From IMG/VR virus record IMGVR_UViG_3300036770_007539, positions 62,001 to 126,000 of that record: DNA of 64,000 nucleotides; one strand, 5' to 3'. Numbering within the stretch: the stretch's first letter is position 1; each line of letters begins with the position of its first letter. The translations under genes and the position numbers were made by a program. Below are positions 29,058-62,600 of this stretch, piece by piece. The notes below the pieces were generated by a model. The model saw only the letters and a program-made list of their open reading frames with translations. It was not told where the DNA came from and did no database searches.

Positions 29058-29827
29058 TGTTAGAATTATTAAAAAAGCTCGAAGAATTGCGTTGTTCTTT
29101 TTTAAATAGAGATCATGAAGTTCTTGATTTAGCAGAACGTGCAGGACCTGATATGTTACAGGCAATTGCAGGCTGCTTTATCGGTTGCGCTCAGTCAGTT
29201 GATGGTCTTGTAAAGGCTCACTCCTACAAGCTTGGAGAAGCGGAGAGAAAAGAATTTGAAGAATTTTGCAAAAACAAAAAAGAAGAAATTGGAGAAGTAG
29301 AAGAAGATTTAGTTGAAAAAGAAGTGACTCCAACAGATTTGGATGCAGTTGCCGCACTAGCAGAAGAATTTTCAAAATCTGGCGATGCACTTTTGCGCAG
29401 ACAGGCTTCTGTATTAGACCAGGTTTTATTGACGTTTGCAGTTCCAGAAGTAAGAATGGAAGAAAAAAAAGCTTATGATGAAAAAATAGCTCAAATCAAA
29501 GAAAATTTAAAAAAAACTCCATCTGAAAAAAAAGCAAAAGTATCTTTTGATCCAAAGCAAGTAGCTGATGTTGTTGATAAAAATGTAAAAAAATATAATC
29601 CATTGGAAGCCCCATTAAAAACTAGAAATTGTATCGATCATCCGGGGCATCATTTAATTAGAGTATCTGATGATGTATATCAATGCTCCTTAGACTATAA
29701 AGAATATAACTTTAAAAGCGGATACACTACATTAAGCGGTAATCAAGTCCCTGGAGGAGATGTTGCTCTTCAATCTCAAGTTCCCAGTTACAGTAATGTT
29801 CGAATGAGTTTTAATCCTGAAAAATAA
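29057..29827 (+). CDS. hypothetical head-block protein with a C-terminal Cys/His motif
   Basis: ATG 29057; TRNCIDHPG...YQCSLD. Confidence 0.7.
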   Translation: MLELLKKLEELRCSFLNRDHEVLDLAERAGPDMLQAIAGCFIGCAQSVDGLVKAHSYKLGEAERKEFEEFCKNKKEEIGEVEEDLVEKEVTPTDLDAVAALAEEFSKSGDALLRRQASVLDQVLLTFAVPEVRMEEKKAYDEKIAQIKENLKKTPSEKKAKVSFDPKQVADVVDKNVKKYNPLEAPLKTRNCIDHPGHHLIRVSDDVYQCSLDYKEYNFKSGYTTLSGNQVPGGDVALQSQVPSYSNVRMSFNPEK

Positions 29828-29847
29828 TTTAACTTAACAGATATATT

Positions 29848-29883
29848 AATAAGCAGGGCAAAAGTTGCCCTGCTTATTTTTTT
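29848..29883 (+). terminator. rho-independent terminator
   Basis: AATAAGCAGGGCAA-aag-TTGCCCTGCTTATT followed by a T-run. Confidence 0.8.
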
Positions 29884-29891
29884 GGAGCTTT

Positions 29892-30608
29892 ATGGATTTT
29901 TCTATTATTTTAAATCATCCCAAGAGAAATGAAATTGTATCTAAATTATTAAATGGAATTTCCCCCAAAGAAATTTCAATCTGGTTAAAAACTTTATTCA
30001 ATGATTCGGATGAAGCTCATCTTAGATTGAGTCAAAAAATAATTGAACAGTTTTCTAAAAGTGATTTTTTAAATTATGAAAAACATTTAAATTCAGATAT
30101 TGCAGCTGCTCAAAATGGAGACGAAAAAGCATTAAATTCTTTAAAAAATAATAAAACTTGGAAACAAAGAGTAGATTCTTTGTTGGAAGAAAAAGTTGAT
30201 ATTAAAGATAGATTAAATAAAATGGAATTATTGGTCAGGGATAGAATGGAACAAGTATTTGATTCTATCCAAAATAATCCACAAGGTACAAGGGGAGACC
30301 ATGTATTAATTAAATATTTTGAGCATTATTTAAAATTATTAGAGACATATAATAAAACTATAAACCTTGCCCCCGATATGATTATTCAACATAATCACAC
30401 TGTAGATTACATAGATAAAAGAACTGCTTTTCTTCAAGATTCTATTTATGAAATTTTAGAAGAAATGGATCCTGAATTTGCAACTATATTTTTAGATAAA
30501 TTAAATCAAAAACTAGCAACATTACAATATAATGAAGAGGAGCCAAAACAAATTGGCATTTCAGAAATACAAAAATTAGAATATCAGGTAATATCTAGCG
30601 ATGAATAA
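29892..30608 (+). CDS. hypothetical protein (candidate small terminase)
   Basis: N-terminal HTH-like helices (HPKRNEIVSKLLNGISPKEI) plus coiled coil; the small-terminase role is a guess from architecture and position. Confidence 0.5.
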   Translation: MDFSIILNHPKRNEIVSKLLNGISPKEISIWLKTLFNDSDEAHLRLSQKIIEQFSKSDFLNYEKHLNSDIAAAQNGDEKALNSLKNNKTWKQRVDSLLEEKVDIKDRLNKMELLVRDRMEQVFDSIQNNPQGTRGDHVLIKYFEHYLKLLETYNKTINLAPDMIIQHNHTVDYIDKRTAFLQDSIYEILEEMDPEFATIFLDKLNQKLATLQYNEEEPKQIGISEIQKLEYQVISSDE

Positions 30609-32433
30609 AATCAATAAAACAGCATATCCTCAAGGTCATGCCGATACCCACATTAAATCTTATGATTTAAATAAATGGACGAAGACATCTCATGATATTT
30701 CTATTTATGCTAGACAGGGCTATGATTATAATAAAATAAAAGACGAATTAACAAAAAATTGGGACGAAATGGAAAAAAAAGATTTTGCACATTGGATGAA
30801 ATACTATCAAAGCAATAGCCAGAACGCCTATAAAAAAGCACAATATCTTGAAGTTGCTCCTGGTGCTTTTGTTCCTGGTGCCATGCTTTCTAGTTCGCCC
30901 GATTTGAATGACTTAAAGACAAAAATTAAATTACCAGAAGAAGAAGATCCCCAATTTAAAATTAATAAAAAAATTAGATCTATTCTCAATAGATTAACCT
31001 CTGCTGAGAAACTTGCCACAGATCCGGATGTTCAAAGAGAATTATCCAAGCGATTAGATATTGGTTTGCATAAATGGCTTGAAGAATTACAAAGAGTAAA
31101 AAGATTAATACAAATTGCTCCTATTAAACACGCAAATTCTTCTATTTTAGAGGATTTAATTTTTAAAGAAGCAAATATATTGGCACACAAAGGTTTTCCC
31201 AAAACCGCACAAGAATTAATAAAAGTTGCACAACTTATTCCTACGCCCAAAGATCCTCAAGGATCCCCACCTGCCCCTGCGCCCGCTCCAAATCTTCCTG
31301 GTGGTCCCCCTGGTCCTCCTTTAGACATGCCTCCTCCGCCTGATGCACCTCCTGGCGCTCCTCCTGGTCCTGGTGTTCCTCCAGGCGGACCTCCTGGCGC
31401 ACCCCCAGCACCTCCAGGCGGCGGGCTAATTCCCACCGATCCTAGCCAGCTTCCTCCGCTTAAACCAAATCCTCCAAAGCCTGCAGAAAAGCCAAAGCCC
31501 AAAGGGCAAGAAGCATTGGATGAAATGCTTGGCAATTTAAATTCAAATAAAAATAAAGATAATAATAATATCGTAGACCCTCTTGTAGATGATTTGGCAG
31601 GAATGACAATTCAAGCCAAAGAAGATGAGTTTGCTGAGATAGAAATTGTTGCTCAAGCTCTTCCTCCAGAAATGGCTACAACGCCTGTAGATGTTCCATT
31701 TTCAGCGCCATCAGCTATTCCTGTGCCATCCCCAGAACCAACTGGATTGCCAAATGCTAATCTTCCCGCATCAACTCCAGTAAAGGCTCCCCCTGCTTCA
31801 GCAGTTAAGCCTAAACCAACAATTGAAGTTTCTGAAGATGAAGATAAATTTGCAGACACTGTAATTCATAAAAAGACAGATGACTTATTAGAAAGTGCTC
31901 TTTCTTCAATTACAATAACAGATGTAATTGAAAGACTAGATACTTTAGTTAACTTATTTAGAACTAGAGAGATACCAAGACAATTAGCCATCATCGATCT
32001 TATGATGGATCAATTAAATTTAAGTTCATTCTTCCCAGGTCTAGCAGAAGCTTCTTCTAAAAGCTTGGAAAGCAATCAATATGCTCTTTCTCGTATTGAA
32101 GAAGTTTTATCTAAGCTCAAGGGCTCAATTAAAAATGACAAATCTAAAGAAATAGATCTTTTAGGTCAAGAAGCATCTACATCTCCTGATGCACTTGATG
32201 TAGAAGGTGTTAGATCGAGTCTACAGTCCTTAGAAGATAAGGAGAAAGCAAGAAAACAACAAAAGAAACAAGAGGAATTAGCAAAAATAGAAGAAGAAAT
32301 TCCAGAAATAGAAGTAGAAGAAGACTTGGCGCAACCAGTAGAAATGCCTGCCAGCATGACTGGAAGAACAGCTCCATTGGCTCCTCCAATTACGGCTCCA
32401 ACGCCTCCAGCCGCAATCAGACCAACGATATAA
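30601..32433 (+). CDS. large Pro-rich head-block protein
   Basis: MNKINKTA|Y start; ~80-aa P/G tract at 31250-31500. Confidence 0.75.
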   Translation: MNKINKTAYPQGHADTHIKSYDLNKWTKTSHDISIYARQGYDYNKIKDELTKNWDEMEKKDFAHWMKYYQSNSQNAYKKAQYLEVAPGAFVPGAMLSSSPDLNDLKTKIKLPEEEDPQFKINKKIRSILNRLTSAEKLATDPDVQRELSKRLDIGLHKWLEELQRVKRLIQIAPIKHANSSILEDLIFKEANILAHKGFPKTAQELIKVAQLIPTPKDPQGSPPAPAPAPNLPGGPPGPPLDMPPPPDAPPGAPPGPGVPPGGPPGAPPAPPGGGLIPTDPSQLPPLKPNPPKPAEKPKPKGQEALDEMLGNLNSNKNKDNNNIVDPLVDDLAGMTIQAKEDEFAEIEIVAQALPPEMATTPVDVPFSAPSAIPVPSPEPTGLPNANLPASTPVKAPPASAVKPKPTIEVSEDEDKFADTVIHKKTDDLLESALSSITITDVIERLDTLVNLFRTREIPRQLAIIDLMMDQLNLSSFFPGLAEASSKSLESNQYALSRIEEVLSKLKGSIKNDKSKEIDLLGQEASTSPDALDVEGVRSSLQSLEDKEKARKQQKKQEELAKIEEEIPEIEVEEDLAQPVEMPASMTGRTAPLAPPITAPTPPAAIRPTI

Positions 32434-32438
32434 ATTAA

Positions 32439-33164: not shown

Positions 33165-33382
33165 GCAGAAGACAAGATTTAGATGTCAGACCCTTCCCGA
33201 ATCCGGTAAGAAAAAATTATGATTATGGGGAAGGGCTATATTTTGGAAAAATGGACAAATTTAAAAGCGTTAGAGATTATTTAAATAAAAGAAAACGTAA
33301 AAAAATAAATAAAAAAAGTTTACATGAATTAGTTGAGCAAATTGAAATCTTCTCTCAAGAAGTCTTAAACTTACAAAAGTAA
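33161..33382 (+). CDS. small basic hypothetical protein
   Basis: GTGA-coupled ORF. Confidence 0.6.
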   Translation: MSRRQDLDVRPFPNPVRKNYDYGEGLYFGKMDKFKSVRDYLNKRKRKKINKKSLHELVEQIEIFSQEVLNLQK

Positions 33383-33383
33383 C

Positions 33384-47604: not shown

Positions 47605-47739
47605 ATGGGATTCATCAAAATAGGCGATGCAACGCCAATTTTAAAAGTGTTAAGCGAAGAAGAACTTAAACAAGAAAAAAATAAAATTAAAAAAGAAAAT
47701 CAAGAAAATATTAATTCAGATAATAGCAATAAAAAATAA
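47605..47739 (+). CDS. small 44-aa ORF (MGFIKIGDATPI...)
   Basis: AAGGA RBS; ATG 47605 to TAA 47739; not in ORF track. Confidence 0.55.
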   Translation: MGFIKIGDATPILKVLSEEELKQEKNKIKKENQENINSDNSNKK

Positions 47740-50700: not shown

Positions 50701-52398
50701 GCACCACCTGCCCCAATGGCAGCCCCCGCTCCAATGGCAGCTCCAGCACCTGTTCCAATGCCAGGCGCTGCCCCCGCTGGTGATTTGTTGGATATTCCAA
50801 TGAACCCAGAAGAAGGAGTTGCAGCTGCAAGATCTGATGTGGGCGGTAAAGGGGATCCATCAGAAAATCTTGATGGATTACTTAACAAGGCAGAAGAAGT
50901 TCTTGCAGATATTCGTGAAGGCGTCAAAGCCCTTCAAAATCAAGCAGGCAAGCCTGGTGGAGAAGCTGGTGAATTTGAAGAATTAGCAGGCGCAGAACAA
51001 TCTGGTGCTCTTAGCCCAACAACAGCATCATTGGTTTCCATGCAAAAGAAACTTGGTTCAACAATTCTTGCAGCTATGAAAGAAACTGCTGTTAAATTAT
51101 CCAGTGTTTCTGATGAATTAAGACTTGCAAAACGAGTTCTTGTTAAGAATGCTTCTCGAGAAGTTCGTTCTACCGTTGAAGAAAGCAAAGCTGCTACAAG
51201 AGAAATTCTTGCTGATTGCTATACTCTTATGAGCGCATTTAGCAAATATGCATCATCTACAGAAATGCTTGCAAAACAAGCCGCTCAAGAGGTTACTATG
51301 GTTAAAATGGCACAAACTAAAAAAGAAACACCAGAAGAAGAAAAGAAACGAAAAGCACGAGAAGCTGCTGCTCGTGAAGTTGCCGGAAAACATCCAATGT
51401 TTAAAACTTTTAAAACAGATGATTCTCACAGTGTTAGCGATTGGGATCATGTAAGCGATGCCTGGGACGTTGATGATTCAGGTTCAAGCGATGATTTGGG
51501 CATGGGCGATGATTTGATGCATGCTCTTGACATGGGCGATGTAGATCATGACTCTATGTTAATAGACGATAATGATGCTGACGTGGAAATGGCAATTGGT
51601 CCTAATGCTAAAGTTAAAGGAGATAGCAATTCTATTGCAGAGCTTGCTAAAAATCTTAAGACTTCCGAAGATCTTTCTACCAAAGAAGGTCGCGCCGCTT
51701 ATCGTGCAAAACAAGCTGCCAAAGCAATGCAATACAGCAGCATGCTTGACGAAGCCCATGGCAAAGCAGGACCAGTTCTTTCTGGAATGAAAGGCGATGG
51801 AGCTAAAGTTGAAACTCTTCAAGAAATTCAAGAAGATATGTTGGGAGTTGCAACCAAAGAAGTGTCATCTAAAGATGTTTCTCCAAAGACCAAAAAAGCA
51901 GCAGACGACATTCAAAAACTTGTCATTGCAGGTCGCATAAATGCATCTGAAGTTGATCAGCTTGTTAAAGCAGGGTTGGATAAAGAAGCTGTTAAATACT
52001 GGAAAGATTTCTACGGTCAATCCAAAGATAAAGCCAGCAAAGAATTTGCAGCAGATCTCACTTCAGAACATGCTCAAGCTAAAAAAGCAGAGAGCATGGA
52101 TGGCTTCCGTGTTAAAATTGCACGCGCCTATGACCTTGCCAACGAAATGGCAATGAAAGGTCTTATCGGTCGTGACAAGCATGCTATCAAAGAACAAGTT
52201 GATGAACTTATGAGCTTCAATGATGCAGGCTTTGAATCCATGAAGAAACACGTTGAACGCACACCAATGACCCGTACCGCCTCTTATGTAATGCCTCAAG
52301 TTGGCTTAATGAGCGAAGAGCTTATTGCCACAGCATCTGCAGAATCAGGTGATCTTGTCAATGAATTTGCAGCAGCTTTTGCTAATCGCAAATACTGA
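47797..52398 (+). CDS. prohead maturation protease (intein-containing) fused to a scaffold-like C-terminal region
   Basis: After intein removal: NNNCDIFP..EL, PLCLDH (His), SVSMG (Ser), ELSIVVNGAD; then long helical and low-complexity region. Confidence 0.8.
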   Translation: MFVKIGEAISITAADIENSENVLSDPEIQNKFEKIAKELKIIAPKGDDFLYFSAVMMHAAEHAALNDDGSFKVTASGDPVKVWWEKKGESVIWKSNDSNLRPYKNNNCFIAGTKILMSDGSVKNIEDIQVGDEVITHKNNFKKVLEISHRPYSGKLLTLKIKNNEKIHCTPEHPFYHADLSGYYTKGLKSLTERKKNSSSFKTAFKFSEINKLSVGDLLTSPVIRHEISTGTINPNRAKILGIFAAEGCYTKKYDKRQGIRFTIGIHEEKTASSIKEVFEEEFPECSVRVLPEPERSVISITATGGNIAEYFFYHVGEMSDQKKLSKELVYADEDSKKAFLSGYIDGDGCLTDYNKLIIITTSPHLAYQTRTMLNSMNIGSSLRRKNTSEGKIKILQNYKEYNCKDHYRVEIYGDAYKKLELEKYTNKYKFKDCTHRVISNFEKDHCLHVITGIEENDFNGMVYNFEVEDDHSYVANGIVTHNCDIFPESELIAAHKRWVGKPLCLDHKSSSVDMIRGLIVDTYYDRKLKRVVALCALDKKNYPDLARKVSTGYAASVSMGTGVGKAICYDCGNVARTEHDFCSHMKNKSCYGEVNLDLNPIELSIVVNGADPKAKIKTIIAAANSIAKYVEMKEDELSKVEPELKNNRFKDMLSSLENVTAQLNQLKEEIEKLSEEMQGEEETSSEDSSDSLEKEASDKSSEYALKSISNKLDTIFEKINKLYSFNKDEQMTTKKQAYFQGGGGMNEPQTYAKEDADTIRNTKDKQMGGQMNTGPVDGMHPGYESFGESEEARKRRLQRLAEEEMRSIRRQAALEVAKENLAKKQAYFQGGGGANEPQTYTKEDADKIRNTQDKQMVGASPFPNTGDVDGLFPGDQDKKEKLSRAKLTARFLKAAAANGNDDLANSRWEVFADKKLVFSASVNEITGGRSNALYDSVANEGFGRSLIAKIRTNGLEKVATMYKSAQAAPPAPMAAPAPMAAPAPVPMPGAAPAGDLLDIPMNPEEGVAAARSDVGGKGDPSENLDGLLNKAEEVLADIREGVKALQNQAGKPGGEAGEFEELAGAEQSGALSPTTASLVSMQKKLGSTILAAMKETAVKLSSVSDELRLAKRVLVKNASREVRSTVEESKAATREILADCYTLMSAFSKYASSTEMLAKQAAQEVTMVKMAQTKKETPEEEKKRKAREAAAREVAGKHPMFKTFKTDDSHSVSDWDHVSDAWDVDDSGSSDDLGMGDDLMHALDMGDVDHDSMLIDDNDADVEMAIGPNAKVKGDSNSIAELAKNLKTSEDLSTKEGRAAYRAKQAAKAMQYSSMLDEAHGKAGPVLSGMKGDGAKVETLQEIQEDMLGVATKEVSSKDVSPKTKKAADDIQKLVIAGRINASEVDQLVKAGLDKEAVKYWKDFYGQSKDKASKEFAADLTSEHAQAKKAESMDGFRVKIARAYDLANEMAMKGLIGRDKHAIKEQVDELMSFNDAGFESMKKHVERTPMTRTASYVMPQVGLMSEELIATASAESGDLVNEFAAAFANRKY
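48118..49245 (+). mobile_element. intein with LAGLIDADG homing endonuclease (376 aa)
   Basis: CFIAGTKILMSDG N-terminus, CTPEHPF block B, ILGIFAAEG and FLSGYIDGDG, VYNFEVEDDHSYVANGIVTHN followed by Cys +1. Confidence 0.95.
49999..50420 (+). repeat. two copies of KKQAYFQGGGG.NEPQTY.KEDAD.IRNT.DKQM...NTG.VDG
   Basis: Copies start at 49999 and 50266. Confidence 0.9.
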
Positions 52399-52475: not shown

Positions 52476-52748
52476 ATGAAATTGCAATTTAATATCGCCT
52501 CTGAAATGAATGAAATTTTACAAAGTTCACTTGTAAAAAGCGCATCTGTTGTTGAGCAAAAAACAAGTAAAAATTATGATGAAATTTCATCTCATATTAT
52601 AAATTTATCAGAGATGGCTATAGAGTTAGACAATCGAGGAATGAATAAAACGGCTTCTTCTTTAAGAAAGACAGCTCGAATGTTTCTTGATTCTGTTGAA
52701 ATTAATAGCCAAGCATATAAAATTGCAGAACTTTACGGACTAGTTTGA
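52476..52748 (+). CDS. small head-block protein carrying the shared helical module
   Basis: VKSAS; LSEMAIELDNRGMNKTASSL. Confidence 0.7.
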   Translation: MKLQFNIASEMNEILQSSLVKSASVVEQKTSKNYDEISSHIINLSEMAIELDNRGMNKTASSLRKTARMFLDSVEINSQAYKIAELYGLV

Positions 52749-52757: not shown

Positions 52758-55700
52758 ATGATAAAATCAAATAATTCTATTGCTTTAGATATGGACAGTT
52801 TAATTCAAAAAAAATTAGAATTAAATAAAACTGCTAAAAAAAATAAAGTTAAATGTTGCAGCAAATGTGGAGAATCTTGTAAATGCGACAAAGATTGTCC
52901 TTGCAATTCTAGCTGTTCTTCTGATTGCTCTAACTGTTATGACATGAGTAAAAAGTCATATCAAGAAATATTTAATTTTATTTTAAAAACATCTGAAAAA
53001 GTTGATAATTTAGGATTTGATAAAATTGCAACTGAGCTTTTAAAAGCATCTTCTAATTTGGATTCTGAGCTACAAGAAAAAAATAAAGATTTAAATTTTG
53101 CAAGAACTAGAAGACCTAAAGCGACTGAGGATGCTAAAAAAACTGAAAAAGCGGCTAAGAAAGCTGAAGAGGAGGCTAAGAAAGCTGAAGAGGAGGCTAA
53201 AAAAGCTGCTGAAGAAGCCGCCCGAGCCGCCGATGCCGCTGCAGAAGAAGCCGCTAAAGAAGCCAGAAGAGCTTCCGAAGAAGCTAATGCCAGAAGGAGA
53301 AGATTAATGTCTGGAATTGCTGAAATTCCCTCTCAGACAGAGAAAAAAACCGAGCCAGCTTCTCCTGAAGTGGTCGTTACAAAAATACCATATTCTGGAC
53401 CAGCAGTCGGAGCAAAAAAATCAAAACCCAGAAAAACCTCCGATAAACCTTCCAATGTACAACGAACAACAGATCCTAGCACTGGAGAAACTGTAGTCAC
53501 GGTTCCGTCTATTTCTAAGCAGCCTAGCGCTGTTAGAACTCCCAAGAATAAAAGCAAGAGCCTGCAGGAGAAACCTAAAGAGAACAAGAGAACTAAAGAA
53601 GACTTAGAGCTAGAGAGAAGAACTCTAGAAGATTTTGAAGGTTTTGAAGGAGAAAGAGAATACGACGAGTCAATAGAATTATTTAAAAAGAAACCCATAC
53701 TTGAGGGCATGACTTTTCGAGATTTGGAAAGCCGAGAATCTCTTGAAGACATCATTGATGATAATGGAAAGCGTAAAGGCGAAGGCAAACGTAAACCCAA
53801 ATCATCTGAAGAATATAAAGAAGCACTCGAACTACAGATGATGGGGGATGTTGAATTAAAAAGAATAAATAGAAAAATTGAAAATCTCAGATCTGCAACA
53901 GGTATTGATCCAAAAGAAAAAAAAGAACAATTAGAAGAATTAGAAAAATTAAAAAATTCTACAATAGAAAAAAAGAAAAAAGAAATAGAAGAAAAAATTG
54001 AAAAATATAAAAAAGAACAATCTAAAGAAGAACCTAAAAAAGAAGCTCCTCTTGCGTCCACTACCAGATCTAGATCTCAAGAAAATTGGAGATACATATC
54101 GCCTCAAGAGTATAAGAATAAACTCATTACAGAGTTAATGGAAGGATTGTTAAAGAAAAAAAATAAAATAAGAGAACTTAAATCAAAAATACGTCTAGCC
54201 CCTGAAGGGACGAATAACACTGAAGAGAAAAAACAATTAGAAGAATTAGAAAAATCATATGAAAATGATGTAGAAAATGGTCAAAAAGAAATAAATGAAA
54301 AAGTTGAAAAATATATAAAATTTTTTAAAAGACAACTTGAAAAGAGGGAGGAGGCTGCAAAATCTAAAGTCAACCACCTCATAAGCCCTATAATAGAGGG
54401 AATTCAAAGACTTTCAAGAGAAAATCTTGACGAAGGTATTGTAGAGATTAATAAAGAATTAGCTAAGGCTGGAGGGAGTTCCAGTGTTGGCTCTATGGTT
54501 CAATCAATAAATAATTTATTAAATTATGAACATAATTTAAGACGTGAAAGAGAAATTTCTAAAAGAATTAACAGAATACTTGCTATTGAAAAAGCAGAAC
54601 TTATTCATTTAGAAAATCAGTTTGATTTATTTGAAAAAGAACAAGGCTCTAAAATAAAACAATTAAAAAAAGATAAAAGCATATCTAACAAAGATAAAAA
54701 AAATAAAAGAGAACAACTAATGGCAGAAGCAGATGCTGAGAGGGCTTTCTTAAGCGATAAACAAAAAGAATTTAACGAAATGTTTCAAATGCTAAGAAAA
54801 GAGCTTTTAAAGCTCCCAGTAGAAGAATTGCATCCTGGGCAACAACCCACCATACCAAATTCAATATCTTATCAAAAAGCATATAATATGTTTAAAAAAG
54901 ATTATGGACATTGGTGGTCTTATGAAAAATTTAAAGAAAGATTAAATTCTTACTTTTCAAATTTATCATACGATGATATAAAAGAATTTTATGAATCTAT
55001 TGTAATAAATAAAGAATTTCCATTATCAAAACAAACTGAATTTATTAATTATTTAAAACCAGCCGCTAGCGCGCCAACTCTTCCCAGCGAATTGGTTCCT
55101 TCATTGGAGTTGGATAGAACTTTAACGGACACAGAGGCAATGAGAGAGATGGAAAGCATGCGAGCTGCAAAATTAAGAGCAAAACTTCTTAAAATAGAAA
55201 ATCCAACAGAAGAAGAAAAAGCTGAAGCAGAAAGATTGTCAAAAGTTATAATGGGCAATAAACAAAGACAATTAGCAGAAGATCTCAAAAAGCAAAAAGA
55301 AGAAGCGGTAGTTGGTGATAGACAAGCTCTTTTAAATAAATATATTTTAGATAAAAGAGATTCGATGATTGAAGAAAAAATAATAAACTTTGTGCCAAAA
55401 CTAATACGTGCCTTTGAACAAAAATATTTTCCTGTCACCATCGAACAAGAGGAACAAATAATAGAATTCTTGTCTATAAAAGTAGACCGAAGCTCACAAG
55501 AAGTTATCAGCGCTGTTTTTAATGACGAAATAACCGATGAATTGCTTCGACTTGTATATATTAAATTAACGAATGAATATCCTGTAGAAGATAAAAAAAC
55601 TGATTATAAAAAAATATTAAAAGAATACTTATTTGAAAATAAAGAAATTTTATCTTATTTTAGAAGATTAAAATCTAAATACAGTTTAAGCGAAGTACAA

Positions 55701-56627
55701 ATTATAAATAACGTAGTTGAAAGCCTTACAGACGAAGAAGTGAAGTTGTCTCTGGTTGATGTAAAGTTAGATGTAGACATAGCAAGAAAAAAGTGGAGAA
55801 AATTATTCATTTTAAGAACTCCTATACCTTTATTTTTAAAGTCAAAAATCGATGAAGAAGTTAAAAGAAATCTAAGCCAGCCAGCTCAATACATACCAGA
55901 TACAGCTCGCCTTTCTTTAACAAAATTTGAAAAGAAAACTCATACACAATTAAAAGATGCTATTAAAAAGTCAAATCTAGTAAGATCTCTCATAGCTCAA
56001 TTAAGTCAAGGCAAGATGATAGATAGTAATAGAATAATTGATGATGTCTTTAATGCAGCTAGCGAAACAGAAATTGAAGAGCTTTTTGACACCGTAGAAG
56101 AGGGCTTTTTAAGCATTCCTGCCTGGCTAGAAGAAGCGATCACAGACAAAATCAACGCAGAGCTTATTGAAGTTGATTATAGAGCACAAGAAGCTGCCAA
56201 AACAAAAGAGTATAAAGAAGCTTTGAAACAGTCAATATTAAATTCAGAAAAGGTTGAAAATTTCTTTAATAATTTAAAATCAACAAGATACAATATAGAA
56301 ATTAATGAAGTTTCTAAAGTTAATATTGTTAATGCAGTGGTTGAAAATATGAGCAAATTTTTATTAGATGATCTTTCAAAACATTTAAACTTACAAGAAT
56401 ATGTATTAAATGTAATTCCATTCTATTTAATGAGGGCATTAGCAGAGGAAGCAGCGAATCATTTTAGGATAGATAAAAAAATAATAAATCAAGAATTTAC
56501 ATTTTTATTTAATAGAAATATTAATAAATTGCCTGAAGTTAACAAAACCTCATCTAGTTTCGATAAAATGCTTCGATCATTAGAGGAAAAAATCAATAAT
56601 TTGTATGCATTTGCCATGGTTAAATAA
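52758..56627 (+). CDS. 1289-aa charged coiled-coil virion/internal protein with an N-terminal Cys cluster
   Basis: CCSKCGESCKCDKDCPCNSSCSSDCSNC; AKKAEEE repeats; shared helical module. Confidence 0.75.
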   Translation: MIKSNNSIALDMDSLIQKKLELNKTAKKNKVKCCSKCGESCKCDKDCPCNSSCSSDCSNCYDMSKKSYQEIFNFILKTSEKVDNLGFDKIATELLKASSNLDSELQEKNKDLNFARTRRPKATEDAKKTEKAAKKAEEEAKKAEEEAKKAAEEAARAADAAAEEAAKEARRASEEANARRRRLMSGIAEIPSQTEKKTEPASPEVVVTKIPYSGPAVGAKKSKPRKTSDKPSNVQRTTDPSTGETVVTVPSISKQPSAVRTPKNKSKSLQEKPKENKRTKEDLELERRTLEDFEGFEGEREYDESIELFKKKPILEGMTFRDLESRESLEDIIDDNGKRKGEGKRKPKSSEEYKEALELQMMGDVELKRINRKIENLRSATGIDPKEKKEQLEELEKLKNSTIEKKKKEIEEKIEKYKKEQSKEEPKKEAPLASTTRSRSQENWRYISPQEYKNKLITELMEGLLKKKNKIRELKSKIRLAPEGTNNTEEKKQLEELEKSYENDVENGQKEINEKVEKYIKFFKRQLEKREEAAKSKVNHLISPIIEGIQRLSRENLDEGIVEINKELAKAGGSSSVGSMVQSINNLLNYEHNLRREREISKRINRILAIEKAELIHLENQFDLFEKEQGSKIKQLKKDKSISNKDKKNKREQLMAEADAERAFLSDKQKEFNEMFQMLRKELLKLPVEELHPGQQPTIPNSISYQKAYNMFKKDYGHWWSYEKFKERLNSYFSNLSYDDIKEFYESIVINKEFPLSKQTEFINYLKPAASAPTLPSELVPSLELDRTLTDTEAMREMESMRAAKLRAKLLKIENPTEEEKAEAERLSKVIMGNKQRQLAEDLKKQKEEAVVGDRQALLNKYILDKRDSMIEEKIINFVPKLIRAFEQKYFPVTIEQEEQIIEFLSIKVDRSSQEVISAVFNDEITDELLRLVYIKLTNEYPVEDKKTDYKKILKEYLFENKEILSYFRRLKSKYSLSEVQIINNVVESLTDEEVKLSLVDVKLDVDIARKKWRKLFILRTPIPLFLKSKIDEEVKRNLSQPAQYIPDTARLSLTKFEKKTHTQLKDAIKKSNLVRSLIAQLSQGKMIDSNRIIDDVFNAASETEIEELFDTVEEGFLSIPAWLEEAITDKINAELIEVDYRAQEAAKTKEYKEALKQSILNSEKVENFFNNLKSTRYNIEINEVSKVNIVNAVVENMSKFLLDDLSKHLNLQEYVLNVIPFYLMRALAEEAANHFRIDKKIINQEFTFLFNRNINKLPEVNKTSSSFDKMLRSLEEKINNLYAFAMVK

Positions 56628-56640: not shown

Positions 56641-56838
56641 ATGAAAAAAATAGATGTAGCTCAAGAGATGACAGATCGTTTAAACGCAGAAAGTGAATTA
56701 AATTCTGATAAATTTAAATTGCAAATTGCTTTAGAGTGTTTAAATAAAGCTGCTATATGTTTTGACATGGCAGATAAAGAAAAATACTCTGAAAAAATTA
56801 CAAAAATAATGGAAAAATTATCTAAAGTAGAGGAATGA
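56641..56838 (+). CDS. small protein consisting mostly of the shared helical module
   Basis: LNKAAICFDMADKEKYSEKITKIM; AGGA RBS. Confidence 0.65.
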   Translation: MKKIDVAQEMTDRLNAESELNSDKFKLQIALECLNKAAICFDMADKEKYSEKITKIMEKLSKVEE

Positions 56839-56839
56839 C

Positions 56840-58231
56840 ATGTTTATTAAAAAGTTTGCAGAAGTAGATTTTGAAAATTTATTTGAAATAAATCTAAAAT
56901 CTTTAGAAAATAAAGAAAATCATTCTAAATCTAATTATTTAGAACATGCAATTAATTTTCTTAAAATTTCTGCAGATCTTTTGGATGAAATTGGTAAAGA
57001 AGAAGCAGCTGAAGAATTAACTCTTATTTTAGATGAACTTGCCGAAGTTGAATCAGATGATACAGATCATGAATCAGAAGAAGGACCGGAAGAAGAATTA
57101 GTAGACTCTTTAGGAAAACATATTCATGATCCGTCATTAGAAGGCACTGATTCTTCTGAAGAAATGCTCAGCCATATGAAAAATAAAGGCTGGATGTTTG
57201 GAAATCACCAACCTGCTTCTGGAATGATAATTATTCACGAAGATGCTGAGCCTTTTGAAAGTTCAAATAAAATGAAAGGTCCAGAATGTAAAGCTTGTGG
57301 TCAATGCGCTAATTGCTGCGATTGTAGCTCTTGCAATTACTGTGGTGATAAAATGGCAGACGATGCGTTATTTTGCGGAGATGCATGCGCTGATATGGCA
57401 GAAGATCAAGGCATGGTCTATGACTGCATGTCAGACGATGATGGCGCTGAAATGAGTGAAGAAGACGAAGAGGAGTATGAAGAAGGTGACGAGGAATCTG
57501 ATGAGATGGAAGAAGATGATGAATTAATGGAAGAAGATGATGAATTAATGGAAGAAGAGGAAGAGTTTAATAAAGAAGCAAATGATTTTTATGATCTTGG
57601 CGCAATGATGGCTCAAGAGCATGCTCAGATGAATTTAGTAAATGTTCTTGAAGCTGTCCTCGCTGTTGAGGAAGATCTTCCATTAGATGAAACTGAAGAA
57701 TTTGCTTTGGGCTATTTAGAAGCATGCGATTGCTCATTAGAAGAGGCTTTAAAACAATTTGAAGAAGTTCAAGAATATCTTGAAGAAAATGATTATGAAC
57801 CAAGATATTCTCTAGAAGAAGTTGAAAGACTTCTTTCGGATGATGAATTATCAGATGACCCAAGCGATGATTTCGATAATGAATTAGAAGGAATTATATC
57901 AAAACAAGAATCCTCTGAATCTATGGAAGAAGATGAGGACATCATAGACCTTGAAGAAGATGAAGATGAAGATGAAGATGAAGATGAAGATGAAGACGAA
58001 GAGGACGAAGAGGACGAGAACGAGGAAGGCGATGAATTAGATGTTAATGATGCTAGATCTAAACCAAAATGCAAAGGTTGGAAAAAATCACCCGTTGGTT
58101 CTCCAAGACAAAGAGCTTTTTGCCGTCGCCACTGCGGCATGAAGAAAAAATTAACTTCTAAGAAAGTCGCAGACGATCCAGATTCTTGCATTAATCAAGG
58201 CTTGCGTCGCTGGAAATGTCGTTGTTCCTGA
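56840..58231 (+). CDS. highly acidic protein with a Cys cluster and basic C-terminal domain
   Basis: Poly-E/D tracts; CKACGQCANCCDCSSCNYC; RAFCRRHCGMKKKLTSKKVADDPDSCINQGLRRWKC. Confidence 0.75.
   Translation: MFIKKFAEVDFENLFEINLKSLENKENHSKSNYLEHAINFLKISADLLDEIGKEEAAEELTLILDELAEVESDDTDHESEEGPEEELVDSLGKHIHDPSLEGTDSSEEMLSHMKNKGWMFGNHQPASGMIIIHEDAEPFESSNKMKGPECKACGQCANCCDCSSCNYCGDKMADDALFCGDACADMAEDQGMVYDCMSDDDGAEMSEEDEEEYEEGDEESDEMEEDDELMEEDDELMEEEEEFNKEANDFYDLGAMMAQEHAQMNLVNVLEAVLAVEEDLPLDETEEFALGYLEACDCSLEEALKQFEEVQEYLEENDYEPRYSLEEVERLLSDDELSDDPSDDFDNELEGIISKQESSESMEEDEDIIDLEEDEDEDEDEDEDEDEEDEEDENEEGDELDVNDARSKPKCKGWKKSPVGSPRQRAFCRRHCGMKKKLTSKKVADDPDSCINQGLRRWKCRCS
57952..58030 (+). repeat. 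(GAAGAT)n acidic microsatellite encoding (ED)n
   Basis: Read directly. Confidence 0.85.
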
Positions 58232-58244: not shown

Positions 58245-58940
58245 ATGTTAAGAATATTACACACCAACAATAGCTTGCCATATTCCTGGCTTGTTGATCC
58301 AAATGCCGAATTTGAGCCCGGTATGATAGCTCAATTGAAAGTATATGGCAATCAAGTTGTTTGTGGTGTATCTGATGGTCTTAGCCCCATTGGAATCATT
58401 GACGATATGAAGAAAACCAGCTTCTCCTCAGCAAAAGTTGATGAGGTTTGCATTATTCCATGTCCTATTCCTACCTTGTCAGGTTCTACTTATGTTACTC
58501 CTATTGATTTAAAATATGAACTAGAAAATGCTAATATTTATCCAGGGTCTTTCGTATGTACCCCTGAATTAGTTGTTTTAAATGCTAGAAATGGCGTCAT
58601 TACTATTCCTGCAGGTACTCCATTAAATTATAGCTCTTCAAATAGTGGGATTTTTGACGCTGTTAGAGTGGTGGTTCGATACAGCCACCAAGTGGCTGGT
58701 ATTCCAGGAGAAAACTCTACAGAGGGTACTGGAAGAATAACAGTTTGGACCAGCAAAATAATAGCTGCAACAGACCAGTTTGATACCTCTGCCTCTTATG
58801 CTTTGAATAGCATTTTATTTTGCGGAATTGATGGCAAGTTAAGCACTTCCAGAATTGATGAAACTTATCCGCCCGTTGGAATTGTTACGGCTCCGCCAAC
58901 AGCTATTTATAGTTTCTTAGAATTTAAGACATACTTCTAA
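58245..58940 (+). CDS. putative head decoration/cement-like protein
   Basis: Beta-rich; FEPGMIAQL...PIGIIDD...ITVW...LFCGIDGKL...VGIV; paralog of the next gene. Confidence 0.55.
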   Translation: MLRILHTNNSLPYSWLVDPNAEFEPGMIAQLKVYGNQVVCGVSDGLSPIGIIDDMKKTSFSSAKVDEVCIIPCPIPTLSGSTYVTPIDLKYELENANIYPGSFVCTPELVVLNARNGVITIPAGTPLNYSSSNSGIFDAVRVVVRYSHQVAGIPGENSTEGTGRITVWTSKIIAATDQFDTSASYALNSILFCGIDGKLSTSRIDETYPPVGIVTAPPTAIYSFLEFKTYF

Positions 58941-59302
58941 TGGTTATAATTTTTGAATCTTTACATGAAAAGCCTGTTAAAATGCTTTTTAAAGATTCTT
59001 TGCATTTTCCAGACCCAGGAATGATCGTTTCATTAGATGATGGAATTGCTAAAATTTGTACGGGCAAAAGACCCTTTGGAATTATTGGAGATTATCCAGA
59101 TGAGTTTGGATTAATTCCTGTTTGGTTTGAGAATACAATCTTTGAAACTAACATGATAGAACCTGGCGTTTATAAATTAAAAGATAAACTATATTGTAGT
59201 GAATATGGTAGATTTACGAATGTAAAAATATTTGAAGATTCTTTGCTAATTGGACACATAGAAGAGATTAAAGAAAATAGTTTGGTAATTGAGCTAATTT
59301 AG
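58940..59302 (+). CDS. short paralog of the preceding decoration-like protein
   Basis: PDPGMIVSL...PFGIIGD...IPVW...LYCSEYGRF...IGHI. Confidence 0.55.
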   Translation: MVIIFESLHEKPVKMLFKDSLHFPDPGMIVSLDDGIAKICTGKRPFGIIGDYPDEFGLIPVWFENTIFETNMIEPGVYKLKDKLYCSEYGRFTNVKIFEDSLLIGHIEEIKENSLVIELI

Positions 59303-59339
59303 CGATATTAAGATATATAGTTTGACGCAAAAGGAATGT

Positions 59340-59660
59340 ATGGATAATGATCAGGATTTAAAAGCATTAATGTCTTCTGAAGTATTTAGAAATTATTTGT
59401 CATTAGAGATGGAAAGAGAAGCAAAAGCTAAACTTCCAAATGAAGAACAAATAAAAATATCTCAACGCAAAGCAAAAGAAGCTAGCGAAGCATTAACTGC
59501 ATTTGCTCAATTTGAAACACAAGTAAAAGAAAACTTTCTTTTAAAAGAAGCTTTTTTAAATATGCAAAAAGAAATTTCTAACAATCCAGCCCTTGCACAA
59601 AAATTAGGTAAAAAATTTACCGATGCAATTATGATGTTAGATTTAGATTCAACTTTTTGA
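59340..59660 (+). CDS. hypothetical protein
   Basis: ATG 59340 with AAGGA RBS; SSEVFRNY resembles SSPVLREY at the start of the next protein. Confidence 0.65.
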   Translation: MDNDQDLKALMSSEVFRNYLSLEMEREAKAKLPNEEQIKISQRKAKEASEALTAFAQFETQVKENFLLKEAFLNMQKEISNNPALAQKLGKKFTDAIMMLDLDSTF

Positions 59661-59667
59661 GGAATAG

Positions 59668-62600
59668 ATGAAAAAAGAAGATAATTTTATCAGCAGCCCA
59701 GTCCTTAGAGAATATTACAATACAGCCATTGAAAAAGGCTGGATTTCTAATGAAGTTGCAGTTAAAACTGCCTCATTGGAAGCTGATCGTTATTCTCCTA
59801 CTGGAAATCTAATGCAGGATTTAGTCAATCTTGCATTTGGTTTGCGAGAGGCGGGTCTATATTCTCAAGCTGAGTCTTTAGAGACAAAGATTAATATTTT
59901 CAAAAAAGCTCAAATAGAACTTGGGTTAATTGATCAAAAAAGCTTATTGATGCAGCAACATGCTCATCCTGAGAATGCTAAAATCGTTGATGCTCAAAAT
60001 GGCTGGGGCGTAGTTCATACAAATGTAGATAGACAACGTAAAATTTTAGAAACCCTAACACATCAACCCAAAGGAATGCATCAAGAAGCTATTAAAACAA
60101 TATCTCTTGCTGCTGCTGAAGCTTTGGGCTTATTAAAGTTAGCTCAAGATGATGGAGATGGGCTTGTAGAAAGTTCGCCTGGCGATGCATTGGGTGAAGA
60201 TGGGGAAGACATGGATGAGACAGTGCCAGAGTCTGGTCAAATATTGCCTTCTGGTAAATTGGTAGATCCTGCCATGGCGCAAAAAGTATCTGCCCATAAA
60301 AATATAACAAAAACAACATATGCTTCTATTAAAAATTCATTAAAAGCTATTAATGGAGCTTTTAGTAAAATTAAAAACAATACTAAACTCTTCTCCAAAG
60401 ATTCCATATTAAAAAATATGGAGAGCCCCACTTCTAAGTGGTATCTATCAGTTATTGGGGCAGATTCTGAGTCTCTTAAAAATTTAGAAAGACTAACTAG
60501 TAATTTTGGAACTACTCCAGAATCCGCTGCTGCAAAAATTGAAGCAATGGAATATGAGTCTTTAAAAAGTCTTATAACATCAGCAATGCCTGCCTATGGA
60601 GGATATGTTATAGGAACTAATTTTAGTTATCCAATGATGGCAGCTCCAGGAGCTAAAAGAGTAAGAAGCAGACAAGAAAGAAAAGAAAAAGCTGAAAGAG
60701 GCTTTTTCGATAAAATATTTGATTCAGAAACTAAATCTGAAGAAGTTGCTAAAGATACTACTCCAGAAGAAATGAAACTGGACATAGTAGAAAAAGCAAA
60801 GTACGATGATCGATACAAGCAAAATAAAAATTCAATTTGGTCAGGAATTATGAGCTATGCAGACCGTCCAAAATTGGGCGGAATCGAGCAGTCGCCTGAA
60901 AAAGTTGCTAGATTGGCAAACGCTATCTCCCAGCATATTTCTAGCGAGAGCGAAAAATTATTTTCAGAAGATAATATTCAAGCAGCAGGCGCTGCTGCAA
61001 TAGCTAAATATTCTACAGTTGTTAATACATTAAATAAAATTTCAACTCAAATTAATGTTGGATTAAACGCCATTTATCCAGACCGAGTAGAGTTATTTAC
61101 ATCTATTACAAAAAGGTCTGCGGCGCTATCAAGATATTTAAATGACCAAAAAGATGAGTTGATTCCAGTTTCTTCTCTTGGGCTCTTTCAAGAGATTCTA
61201 GGAAACGTAGCAGCTATCAATGCCTCTGCTTTAAATGCCGTTTCTGTATTTGAAACCAATCCTATTAGCACAGAGCTTGAATCTCCTAGGGTATCTTCTA
61301 AGAAGGCAAAGCCTATTTTAGATAATTTGGTTTACTGCATTAACATGATGGATCAATATGCTGATTATTTGAGAGTAAAAGCTCCTAATGGTCCAGATTA
61401 TAAGAAAGTCACAAATTATTATAATAAAATGATGGCTATTCATCAAGCCGTTAATGCCAATCAAAATAAAACTTGGGCAGACGTTCAAGCCGCCATTGCA
61501 GGTAAAGCTGGATTGAGTTTTGAATCTTATGATCATCTTAATTCTTATATTGCAAATCTTAGAAACCGAGTTGCGCAAGCTGTTGCTCAAAGCCCTGGAT
61601 TAGGAGTTAAGGCAAGCGATGATAATCAAGTGGTAAAATTGGGTCAATCCATGCTTGAAGAAGCAGTAAGTAATGTTAAAGGAACTATAGGAAATCTTTT
61701 CGGGGGTATACCTGCGGCTGCGGGTCCCGTTGCTACTCCCGCAGCCGCAGCAGCTGCAATTGGAGCAGTAGGAGCAATAGGAGAACCCTTGACTCCTGAA
61801 CCAAAAAAAGTGGATTCATCAGTTAAAACCCCAGATGTAGCTGCGTTTAATCCTGCCCCTTCAGGCGGCGTGGCTGCGGGCGGCGGGGCTGCAGGCGCAG
61901 GCTCTGGTGGAGTATCTAGTGGCAAAGGACCTTCTGCTCCAGCAACAAGCAAAGATAAACTTTCTGCAGCCAGACAAAAAGTTTGGGAAATGCAAGAAAT
62001 GCTTCAAGAATTATCAGAGTTCTTAACAAAGAACCCAAGTAAAGCCCCAGAAGCAAATAAGGCTGATTTTGATACCATTATGTTCGTTGGGAGATCCAAT
62101 CAAAAAGGAAGCCTAGATGGAGATTGGGGCAGAAGAACCACCAGCTCAATCACCGCTGCAAACAAAGCAACTAAATTAAGTTTAACTCCTTCTCCTTCAA
62201 ATAAAGCTGATGAATCAGTTTTATCGAATGAAGCTACTAAGAACACTCAAGCCATACAAAATTGGCTAGACAATAACGGATGGACAAGAGCAGGGGAGAG
62301 ACCAGCAGTGGAGCTTGACAGAATTTCCATGGCTATATTTGATTATACTTCCGAGGCAACTGCCCAACAAGATCCAAATGGAACTCCATTAAAAGATAAA
62401 GATCTATCTTCCTTATATGCTTTTTATAAATATTTAGAAAAATTTGTTTCAGAACTAAGTATATTGCCTAAAGATCAATGGTTTTTAATATTTAGCTGGT
62501 TTAACGGCAGAGTGGAGGCATTACTTGGATCTGAACAAATTCCAGCAGGTAAAAAACCTATTTTTAATACTTATAAAAATTATATTTCTAATTTAAATTT

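What the first reader, a model, noticed from the sequence alone, without database searches (positions are those of the whole stretch)
29348..59892. Recurrent ~22-aa helical module in about 8 proteins: candidate capsid-targeting tag
Seen in sequence: LSEMAIELDNRGMNKTASSL (52605), ILKTSEKVDNLGFDKIATEL (~52980), LNKAAICFDMADKEKYSEKI (~56740), LKISADLLDEIGKEEAAEEL (~56960), LVNLAFGLREAGLYSQAESL (59821), IFKEANILAHKGFPKTAQEL (31159), VAALAEEFSKSGDALLRRQASVL (29348), and a weaker LLSYSQQLEDIDLNKSLKLL (~43012). Consensus L-x3-(A/S)-x2-(L/F)-(D)-x2-G-x4-A-x2-L. Two ORFs (52476, 56641) are little more than this module; in 52758 and 59668 it sits near the N-terminus flanked by K-x-A sites. Inference, by analogy to the T4 internal-protein capsid targeting sequence: a portable tag that docks cargo on the scaffold/prohead and is then cleaved off. 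Together with the K-x-A code this would be a modular protein-loading system.
Basis: partly seen in the sequence, partly recalled or inferred. Interest (0 to 1): 0.8.

Follow-up and report, generated by a model that had tools for sequence, protein, structure and literature searches.

The report
Shared helical domain in phage head proteins
Five neighbouring genes in the head-assembly region of an uncultured 301-kb phage, and probably a sixth gene elsewhere, share a real helix-turn-helix domain near their start, which most likely lets proteins with very different tails join the same structure inside the forming head; whether it is a cleaved "address tag" is untested.

Summary
All eight quoted segments exist at the stated coordinates. 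As a set of eight 20-mers they do not support each other: leave-one-out HMMs recover only one.

With orthologues from about 9 related metagenomic phages, five resolve into a real paralogous domain:
- They are 52476 (A), 52758 (B), 56641 (C), 56840 (D) and 59668 (E).
- Profile-profile P is 3e-5 for A-B, 1e-5 for C-D and 8e-5 for A-E. The best of 175 background comparisons is 7e-3.
- The domain is an N-terminal motif, a conserved K-x-A(S) and a helix-Gly turn-helix hairpin.

Of the other three, 30601 (F) is a probable sixth carrier (P = 3e-4 against a 60-member family, in register). 29348 and 43012 are not supported.

A-D lie directly after a homologue of the phage G gp19 head-maturation protease and before a decoration-like protein. 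The split major capsid gene lies just past the window. The domain is the only conserved part of B, D and E. E's paralogue lacks it.

Best reading: a clade-specific docking or co-assembly domain of scaffold-like or internal head proteins. Cleavage at K-x-A and capsid targeting are untested. This is a new variant of a known kind, of moderate interest.

The parts
52476..52748 (+). Gene A (90 aa), the domain on its own.
   Evidence: Orthologues occur in 9 lineages at 37-49% identity. The AF2 model has pLDDT 79.5, with H36-53, a turn at R-G-M and H57-71 at pLDDT >90. An exhaustive HMM search finds only 7 clusters, all 78-90 aa.
52758..53078 (+). N-terminal domain of gene B (aa 1-107 of the 1289-aa product of 52758-56627).
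   Evidence: This is the only part alignable with orthologues (45-49% identity over aa 1-107). hhalign A-B gives P = 3.2e-5 across the whole domain. An HMM trained on B retrieves A at 15.7 bits against a null maximum of 7.3.
53079..56627 (+). Variable tail of B. It is K/E-rich with low-complexity repeats in the window. It is poly-acidic and much shorter in most relatives (complete B is 205-845 aa in relatives).
56641..56838 (+). The turn Gly is replaced by D/N/S/G.
   Evidence: hhalign C-D gives P = 1.1e-5 (probability 82%) and A-C gives 5.9e-3 on the N-terminal motif. Orthologues share 47-61% identity.
56840..57049 (+). N-terminal domain of gene D (aa 1-70 of the 463-aa product of 56840-58231). 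It is followed by an acidic tract, a Cys-rich cluster and a basic C-terminal motif.
   Evidence: An HMM trained on A, B, C and E retrieves D at 8.3 bits against a null maximum of 7.0. The C-terminal 45 aa hit phrog_11180/3477/727 and, weakly, DUF6321.
59668..60177 (+). N-terminal domain of gene E (aa 1-170 of the 1184-aa product of 59668-63222).
   Evidence: The N-domain is about 63% identical between lineages against 32% for the whole protein. hhalign A-E gives P = 7.6e-5 and D-E gives 1.5e-3. AF2 is low-confidence overall, but H48-61/turn/H65-84 is the best-predicted part. The 470-aa paralogue lacks the segment.
31147..31236 (+). Probable sixth copy: the helix-turn-helix that ends the N-terminal domain of F (aa 183-212 of the 610-aa product of 30601-32433), followed by a Pro-rich linker.
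   Evidence: The segment is conserved across 60 homologue clusters. hhalign B-F gives P = 3.1e-4 over full length and 6.6e-5 over the N-domain, A-F gives 4.2e-3 and 1.4e-3 respectively, and E-F gives 3.2e-3 over the N-domain, all in register. F gave the two best of the 175 background comparisons.
29348..29416 (+). Quoted segment in the 260-aa protein (G). It is not a member.
   Evidence: It gives no hit in any leave-out HMM or hhalign test. It does not fit the ungapped register.
43012..43071 (+). Quoted segment in the C-terminal tail of the 778-aa protein that follows the portal (H). Membership is unsupported. The tail itself is conserved.
   Evidence: The C-terminal 45 aa are conserved in an orthologue that otherwise aligns only over aa 2-332. 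hhalign gives P = 0.085-0.13. No further orthologues were found.
47797..52398 (+). Context: a homologue of the phage G gp19 head-maturation protease with a long C-terminal extension, immediately upstream of A. The window copy is interrupted by an intein.
   Evidence: phrog_18299 at 5.7e-13. Intein Pfam hits. phmmer to phage G gp19 at 1.3e-29. gp19 is annotated as a head maturation protease in PMC12484599. Atlas leads to S78/S77/S80 proteases.
58245..58940 (+). Context: a decoration/cement-like protein (231 aa) immediately downstream of D.
   Evidence: Atlas feature and structure neighbours are cement/decoration families, which is a lead only. It is 94-95% identical across lineages.
59322..59660 (+). 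Context: a 112-aa protein that precedes E and shares E's extreme N-terminal motif (S-S-E-V-F-R-N-Y).
   Evidence: 470-family against 112-family P = 0.012; weak.

Best explanation
A, B, C, D and E are tandem paralogues that share a clade-specific N-terminal helical domain. F probably shares its core.

**Domain layout.** The domain has three parts: a short amphipathic N-terminal helix, a conserved K-x-A(S), and a helix-Gly turn-helix hairpin. Numbered from the turn Gly as 0, the hairpin has an aliphatic residue at -11, a small residue at -7, L/F at -4, an acidic residue at -3, a small residue at +5 and L at +8.

**Proposed function (inferred).** I propose that it is a common docking or co-assembly domain of scaffold-like or internal head proteins.
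- The hairpins either pack with one another or bind one shared partner in the procapsid. Candidate partners are the long C-terminal extension of the protease, the inner capsid surface or the portal.
- The domain-only proteins A and C would be the minimal subunits.
- Proteins with very different tails would thereby be incorporated: acidic or K/E-rich B, acidic D and the 1184-aa E.

**What is shown:** homology, conservation, predicted hairpin structure, gene position and modular presence or absence.

**What is inferred:** procapsid location and docking. Processing by the neighbouring protease is possible but unsupported.
For: - **Homology.** hhalign gives A-B 3.2e-5, C-D 1.1e-5, A-E 7.6e-5, D-E 1.5e-3 and A-C 5.9e-3. 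All are in the same register. The background minimum is 6.9e-3 in 175 tests.
- **Collinear features in A and B.** The N-terminal motif, K-x-A and hairpin occur in the same order in both.
- **Key positions.** They are conserved in 37 cluster sequences and 60 F sequences.
- **Structure.** The hairpin is predicted with pLDDT >90 in A. It is the best-predicted part of the E N-domain.
- **Gene order.** It is conserved in all relatives, including the distant L021: protease homologue, A, B, C, D, decoration-like protein, 120 aa, 112 aa, E.
- **Capsid gene.** The split major capsid gene lies a few kb downstream.
- **Only conserved part.** The domain is the only conserved part of B, D and E.
- **Scaffold-like tails.** B and D have acidic or charged low-complexity tails.
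- **Modularity.** E's paralogue lacks the unit. B of L021 lacks the Cys-rich insert.
Against: - No virion or prohead proteomics exists for this uncultured clade.
- No homologue was detected in phage G, the closest cultured relative (best P = 1.5e-3 in 150 tests). No experimental anchor can therefore be transferred.
- No Pfam, PHROG or PDB match gives a function.
- F carries the hairpin internally. It sits in a conserved block next to a CCA-adding enzyme, upstream of the terminase, and that block is not known to be structural.
- Small residues at helix crossings plus a turn Gly are generic features of tight alpha-hairpins, so part of the similarity could be convergent.
- One reversed-sequence control reached P = 8.5e-4.
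Confidence: 0.45

Rival explanations
1. One reading: a portable capsid-targeting tag, analogous to the T4 CTS, present in about 8 proteins. It would dock cargo on the scaffold and then be cleaved off at flanking K-x-A sites by the prohead protease.
For: - The genes lie next to a head-maturation protease homologue.
- A conserved domain is joined to hypervariable tails, as with T4 internal proteins and SPN3US propeptides.
- K-x-A(S) is conserved upstream of the hairpin in the A, B and E families. A K-x-A is conserved on both sides of E's hairpin.
- In the 444-aa protein that follows E, the L021 orthologue starts exactly at M-T-K-T-A-G, while the others carry 30-40 extra residues before it.
Against: - No cleavage data exist.
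- K-x-A is not enriched in B, C, D or E. Conserved N-terminal K-x-A also occurs in replication-side proteins.
- One K-x-A lies inside the hairpin's second helix in A, B and F.
- The hairpin is not at the extreme N-terminus.
- Two of the eight members fail.
- Tag-only proteins A and C would have no cargo.
- The major capsid protein fragment aligns from about residue 5 to profile position 9 of phrog_2522, which leaves no long propeptide.
Confidence: 0.15
2. The domain has nothing to do with capsid entry. It would be a hetero-dimerisation or chaperone module that pairs each short protein with the long protein encoded next to it (A with B, C with D, 112 aa with E). This could serve folding, stabilisation or regulation of assembly factors that may not end up in the head.
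For: - A short ORF followed by a long ORF with a similar N-terminus recurs four times: 47605 then the protease, A then B, C then D, and 59322 then E.
- The strongest similarities are within adjacent pairs.
Against: - A-E similarity crosses the pairs.
- The pairing rests on sequence resemblance only.
- The 47605 ORF is present in only two lineages.
- The head-module position and the scaffold-like tails are not explained.
Confidence: 0.2
3. The resemblance is largely convergent or due to chance. Amphipathic alpha-hairpins with a Gly turn and small residues at the helix crossing arise repeatedly, and a reader scanning about 21,000 residues can collect eight look-alikes.
For: - Leave-one-out on the eight 20-mers fails for seven.
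- G and H get no support.
- A consensus regex also hits an unrelated protein in the relative genome, and hhalign rejects that protein (P > 0.19).
- Foldseek finds only generic helical bundles.
- One reversed-sequence control reached 8.5e-4.
Against: - For A-E the profile P-values are 100-fold beyond the background.
- The similarity extends over 40-70 residues with collinear extra motifs.
- The genes are tandem neighbours in every lineage.
- The loose regex gives 5 hits against 0.45 expected, though the regex was derived post hoc.
Confidence: 0.1

Closest known systems
T4 capsid targeting sequence (CTS) of internal proteins IPI-III and Alt
   Same: Both are conserved N-terminal elements on otherwise very variable proteins encoded by a large phage that has a prohead protease. 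The proposed role is incorporation into the prohead core (PMC7411985).
   Different: - The T4 CTS is about 10-20 aa at the extreme N-terminus and is removed by gp21.
- Here the unit is a 40-45 aa hairpin inside a 70-170 aa domain.
- No sequence relation, cleavage or packaging is shown here.
- Domain-only proteins exist here.
Long N-terminal propeptides of SPN3US/phiKZ head and ejection proteins
   Same: - The N-terminal region is of similar length: 111-130 aa propeptides in SPN3US gp47, gp53, gp54 and gp75.
- A targeting role was hypothesised for the gp47 propeptide (PMC7411985).
- Both are giant-phage contexts with many internal head proteins.
   Different: - The SPN3US propeptides are defined by mass spectrometry and end at a T4-like cleavage motif.
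- Here there is no proteomics and no recognisable cleavage motif.
- The protease belongs to the phage G gp19 lineage.
- No sequence similarity was tested or found.
Helix-turn-helix coat-binding domain of the P22 scaffolding protein
   Same: Both are small helix-turn-helix elements in helical, charged, fast-evolving proteins encoded between the portal/protease and capsid genes. The P22 HTH is essential for coat binding (bioRxiv 10.1101/2022.12.13.520362 abstract).
   Different: - The P22 domain is C-terminal and there is a single scaffolding gene.
- Here the domain is N-terminal and sits in five tandem paralogues.
- Foldseek of the A model gave no significant PDB match.
Bacillus phage G head module (gp14 portal, gp19 protease, gp26 decoration, gp27 capsid)
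   Same: - The portal (34% identity), the protease N-domain (1e-29) and the capsid protein (1e-23 for the last fragment) are homologous.
- The gene order is similar.
   Different: No counterpart of the A-E domain is detectable in phage G gp8-gp39. The domain family is confined to 7 clusters at 50% identity among 1.84 billion proteins.

Membership tests
T4-type capsid targeting sequence | Short (about 10-20 aa) peptide at the extreme N-terminus | tested here: not met
   The hairpin spans aa 36-71 (A), 71-100 (B), 24-62 (C), 31-69 (D) and 48-84 (E). A separate short N-terminal motif exists, but it is not the quoted module.
T4-type capsid targeting sequence | Removed by the prohead protease at a defined motif | not testable with these tools
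   No proteomics exists. K-x-A is conserved in the A, B and E families but is not enriched and is not shown to be a site.
T4-type capsid targeting sequence | Sufficient to direct a foreign protein into the head | not testable with these tools
   This needs an experiment, and no cultured host is known.
Giant-phage N-terminal propeptides (SPN3US/phiKZ type) | Conserved N-terminal region of about 100 aa or more on head or ejection proteins | tested here: inconclusive
   Conserved N-domains of 70-170 aa are shown. That the proteins are in the head is inferred from gene position only.
Giant-phage N-terminal propeptides (SPN3US/phiKZ type) | Cleavage C-terminal to a T4-like motif, shown by mass spectrometry | not testable with these tools
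   By eye I found no conserved x-x-E motif at the domain boundary across all orthologues.
Scaffolding proteins (P22 gp8-like functional class) | Helical, charged protein encoded between the portal/protease and capsid genes | tested here: met
   AF2 predicts A as all-helical. B and D have acidic or K/E-rich tails. The gene order is protease, A-D, decoration-like protein, then capsid.
Scaffolding proteins (P22 gp8-like functional class) | Helix-turn-helix that binds the coat protein; present in proheads and absent from virions | not testable with these tools
   A hairpin is predicted. Binding and prohead presence are untested. There is no structural match to solved scaffolds.
New paralogous domain family (A-E) defined here | Profile-profile similarity beyond background, in one common register | tested here: met
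   Met for A, B, C, D and E. F is probable. G and H are not met.

The most novel reading that the evidence does not exclude
The hairpin domain would be a natural, exchangeable loading module of a giant-phage head. Domain-only proteins A and C would form the core lattice. Any protein carrying the same hairpin (B, D, E and perhaps F) would co-polymerise with them and so be packaged. The unit would have moved between proteins, being present in E and absent from its paralogue. It would be removed by the gp19-like protease at K-x-A(S). That would be a second, structurally different, naturally modular encapsidation code besides the T4 CTS.
Probability: 0.15. Interest if true: 0.6.

Novelty: new variant of a known kind. 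Interest (0 to 1): 0.38.

Why it matters
Large phages pack many proteins into their heads, and how those proteins are selected is known in only a few model systems. A defined, conserved hairpin domain shared by tandem head-module proteins with interchangeable tails would give a concrete, testable handle on protein loading or scaffold co-assembly. This would be in the phage G-related lineage of huge phages, which is uncultured apart from phage G itself. If function is confirmed, it would also be a candidate fusion tag for loading cargo into capsids. As it stands it is a new sequence family (no Pfam or PHROG match, 7 clusters worldwide) with an inferred role, not a demonstrated mechanism.

Tried and rejected
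- **HMM of the eight 20-mers.** It is circular and fails leave-one-out.
- **Leave-one-family-out 40-column HMMs.** They recover A and D but not B, C or E. The ungapped short profile has too little power, so I replaced it with hhalign on N-domain alignments.
- **Word-indexed protein search with A.** It found only A itself.
- **Exhaustive profile search with the A family.** It found no long proteins, so it could not show the module on other cargo.
- **Metagenome scan with the 231-aa protein.** It gave only 6 loci.
- **Foldseek of the A model against the PDB.** There was no significant match.
- **AF2 of the E N-domain.** The model is low-confidence (pLDDT 45).
- **Pfam and PHROGs on A-E, F, G, H and sub-regions.** There were no informative hits.
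- **Peptidoglycan-binding lead for E.** It came from the atlas at scores below 0.8 and Pfam did not confirm it.
- **Phage G gp8-gp39.** There is no counterpart of the domain.
- **The 444-aa protein after E.** It matched a consensus regex but hhalign rejected it.
- **K-x-A as a general code.** It is not enriched in B-E and also occurs in non-head proteins.
- **H orthologue search.** It found nothing new.
- **Not run.** I did not use read mapping or RNA tools, because expression would not discriminate between the hypotheses.

Full report
**Where the window comes from**

The window is part of a 301-kb viral contig (IMGVR_UViG_3300036770_007539).
- G+C is about 33%, and almost all genes are on the + strand.
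- Up to about 27 kb it encodes replication functions: DNA polymerase, a UvsX-like recombinase, SSB, RuvC and a sigma factor.
- Later genes are the large terminase at 35619-37487, PhoH on the minus strand and the portal at 38952-40706.
- The closest cultured relative is Bacillus phage G.
  - Its portal is 34% identical.
  - Its gp19 matches the N-terminal part of the 1533-aa product of 47797-52398 at E = 1.3e-29.
  - Its capsid protein gp27 matches fragments of a capsid gene just past the window end, which is split by two LAGLIDADG endonuclease insertions.
- gp19 is annotated as a head maturation protease in PMC12484599. PHROG 18299 and atlas leads agree with that annotation.
- The 231-aa product of 58245-58940 resembles decoration or cement proteins. 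This is a lead only.

**Checking the observation**

All eight strings are at the quoted coordinates. An HMM built from them separates them from shuffled proteomes, but that test is circular. Leave-one-out retrieves only the 52476 segment. Taken as eight 20-mers, the motif is therefore not self-supporting.

Longer alignments tell a different story for the 52-60 kb cluster.
- The 90-aa protein A resembles the N-terminus of the next gene, B (z = 5.7).
- The 65-aa protein C resembles the N-terminus of the next gene, D (z = 5.3).
- phmmer gives reciprocal best hits for both pairs.

**Relatives**

Scans of viral and metagenome contigs, an exhaustive profile search and contig look-ups produced about nine lineages. 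All have the same gene order:
- protease homologue;
- A (86-91 aa);
- B (205-1289 aa);
- C (60-71 aa);
- D (160-463 aa);
- the 231-aa protein;
- a 120-aa protein;
- a protein of about 107 aa;
- E (1071-1184 aa).

A-E evolve fast, at 28-61% identity. Over the same lineages the terminase, the portal and the 231-aa protein are 89-95% identical.

Within B, only aa 1-107 can be aligned. In D, only the first 70 aa or so and the last 66 aa align across lineages. In E, the first 170 aa are about 63% identical against 32% overall.

**Is the shared element real?**

With 5-10 orthologues per family, hhalign gives the following:

| Pair | P | Note |
|---|---|---|
| A-B | 3.2e-5 | A 1-74 to B 1-107, bridging B's Cys-rich insert |
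| C-D | 1.1e-5 | |
| A-E | 7.6e-5 | K-T-A-S plus hairpin |
| D-E | 1.5e-3 | |
| A-C | 5.9e-3 | N-terminal motif |
| A-D | 0.046 | |
| B-D | 0.039 | |

- The background was 175 comparisons of these five profiles with 35 other gene families of the window. Its best values were 6.9e-3 and 1.1e-2.
- Reversed controls gave 0.03-0.6, with one outlier at 8.5e-4.
- Anchored on the turn Gly, the conserved positions are aliphatic (-11), A/S (-7), L/F (-4), D/E (-3; R in E), G (0; D/N in C), A/S (+5) and L (+8).
- AF2 models A as all-helical, with a confident hairpin H36-53/turn/H57-71.
- The E N-domain model is poor overall. The same hairpin (H48-61/turn/H65-84) is its best-predicted part.

I conclude that A-E share a homologous domain, and that tandem duplication explains their adjacency.

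**The other three segments**

- **F (30601).**
  - It gave the two best background hits, both exactly at the quoted segment.
  - A search found 60 homologue clusters. In these, the segment is a strongly conserved helix-turn-helix that ends the N-terminal domain before a Pro-rich linker.
  - Against that deep profile, B-F gives P = 3.1e-4 over full length and 6.6e-5 over the N-domain. A-F gives 4.2e-3 and 1.4e-3 respectively, and E-F gives 3.2e-3 over the N-domain. All are in register.
  - F is a probable sixth carrier, but its hairpin is internal.
  - Its gene lies in a conserved block next to a CCA-adding enzyme, and that block is not identified as structural.
- **G (29348).** It never scores and does not fit the register.
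- **H (43012).** It lies in a conserved C-terminal tail, but membership is not supported.

**Modularity**

- E has a 470-aa paralogue just past the window. The two share collinear segments on either side of E's K-T-A-S + hairpin block (P = 5.6e-5 and 8.7e-4), and the paralogue lacks the block itself.
- The B orthologue in L021 lacks the Cys-rich insert.
- B's tail ranges from poly-acidic repeats to a roughly 1180-aa K/E-rich region.
- The hairpin unit therefore behaves as a discrete block that has been gained or lost.

**K-x-A**

- A K-x-A(S) follows the N-terminal helix in 10/10 B, 5/5 E and 7/9 A orthologues.
- Another K-x-A lies in the hairpin's second helix of A, B and F.
- K-x-A is enriched only in A and in the unrelated 27438 protein. 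It is not enriched in B-E.
- Conserved N-terminal K-x-A also occurs in proteins outside the head cluster.
- Nothing here shows that it is a cleavage site.
- One weak hint concerns the 444-aa protein after E. Its L021 orthologue starts exactly at M-T-K-T-A-G, while the other orthologues have 30-40 more residues upstream.

**Interpretation**

The following are shown:
- a clade-specific paralogous helical domain;
- its conservation against hypervariable tails;
- its position directly after the protease homologue and before the decoration-like and capsid genes;
- its modular presence or absence.

The following is inferred. The domain is a docking or co-assembly element of scaffold-like or internal head proteins, with A and C as minimal subunits.

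This reading works like the T4 capsid targeting sequence, the SPN3US/phiKZ propeptides (PMC7411985) and the P22 scaffold helix-turn-helix. Membership in any of those families is not supported:
- the position and length differ from the T4 tag;
- the domain is N-terminal rather than C-terminal, unlike P22;
- no cleavage or packaging evidence exists.

The family has no Pfam, PHROG or PDB relative. It is confined to 7 clusters among 1.84 billion representative proteins. No counterpart is detectable in phage G.

**Verdict**

Modularity and head context hold, while targeting and cleavage are untested.
- This is a new variant of a known kind, of moderate interest.

Noticed in passing
window 47797-52398 (aa ~108-483): The head-maturation protease homologue carries an intein with a LAGLIDADG endonuclease. 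The orthologues in L007, L009 and L010 lack it. The protein also has a conserved C-terminal extension of about 900 aa, far longer than the 300-aa phage G gp19.
   Followed up: partly
L003 17809-21189 (window-equivalent ~67476-70853, just past the window end): The major capsid gene (phrog_2522, phage G gp27-like) is in pieces, separated by two LAGLIDADG homing-endonuclease ORFs. These are probably introns.
   Followed up: partly
window 47605-47739: A 44-aa ORF repeats the N-terminus of the downstream protease homologue (MGFIKIGDA against MFVKIGEA) and is also present in L009. Together with A then B, C then D, and 59322 then E, this makes four cases of a short ORF followed by a long ORF with a similar N-terminus.
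   Followed up: partly
window 52854-52937 (B aa 33-60) and ~57290-57400 (D aa ~150-190): Metallothionein-like Cys-rich clusters occur in B (10 Cys in 28 aa) and in D. They are conserved in most orthologues, but the B cluster is absent from the L021 orthologue.
   Followed up: no
window 58245-58940: The 231-aa decoration/cement-like protein is 94-95% identical between lineages whose neighbouring genes are only 30-60% identical. This suggests either extreme constraint or recent exchange.
   Followed up: partly
window 59322-59660, 59668-59760; L003 14883-16295: A second shared N-terminal motif (S-x-V-F/L-R/E-E/N-Y ... A-I/M-E) links the 112-aa protein, E and a 470-aa protein downstream. E and the 470-aa protein are paralogues in their N-domains.
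   Followed up: partly
window 58090-58231 (D C-terminal ~45 aa): A basic, Cys-containing C-terminal motif of D matches the C-termini of several PHROG families of very different lengths and, weakly, DUF6321. This is another apparently portable end-module.
   Followed up: no
window 27438-32433; L027, L028: The block of 539-aa protein, G (260 aa), 247-aa protein, F and CCA-adding enzyme is syntenic in distant contigs, and F has 60 homologue clusters. The function of the block is unknown. The 539-aa protein has 16 K-x-A against 3.7 expected.
   Followed up: partly
window 42960-43101 (H C-terminal 45 aa): The C-terminal tail of the 778-aa protein after the portal is conserved in a 520-aa orthologue. 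BLAST aligns the rest of the two proteins only over their N-terminal 330 aa or so.
   Followed up: partly
window 63219-64000 (start of 444-aa protein); L021 8348-9373: The L021 orthologue of the protein after E begins exactly at M-T-K-T-A-G. Other orthologues carry 30-40 extra N-terminal residues before the conserved K-T/Q-A-G.
   Followed up: no
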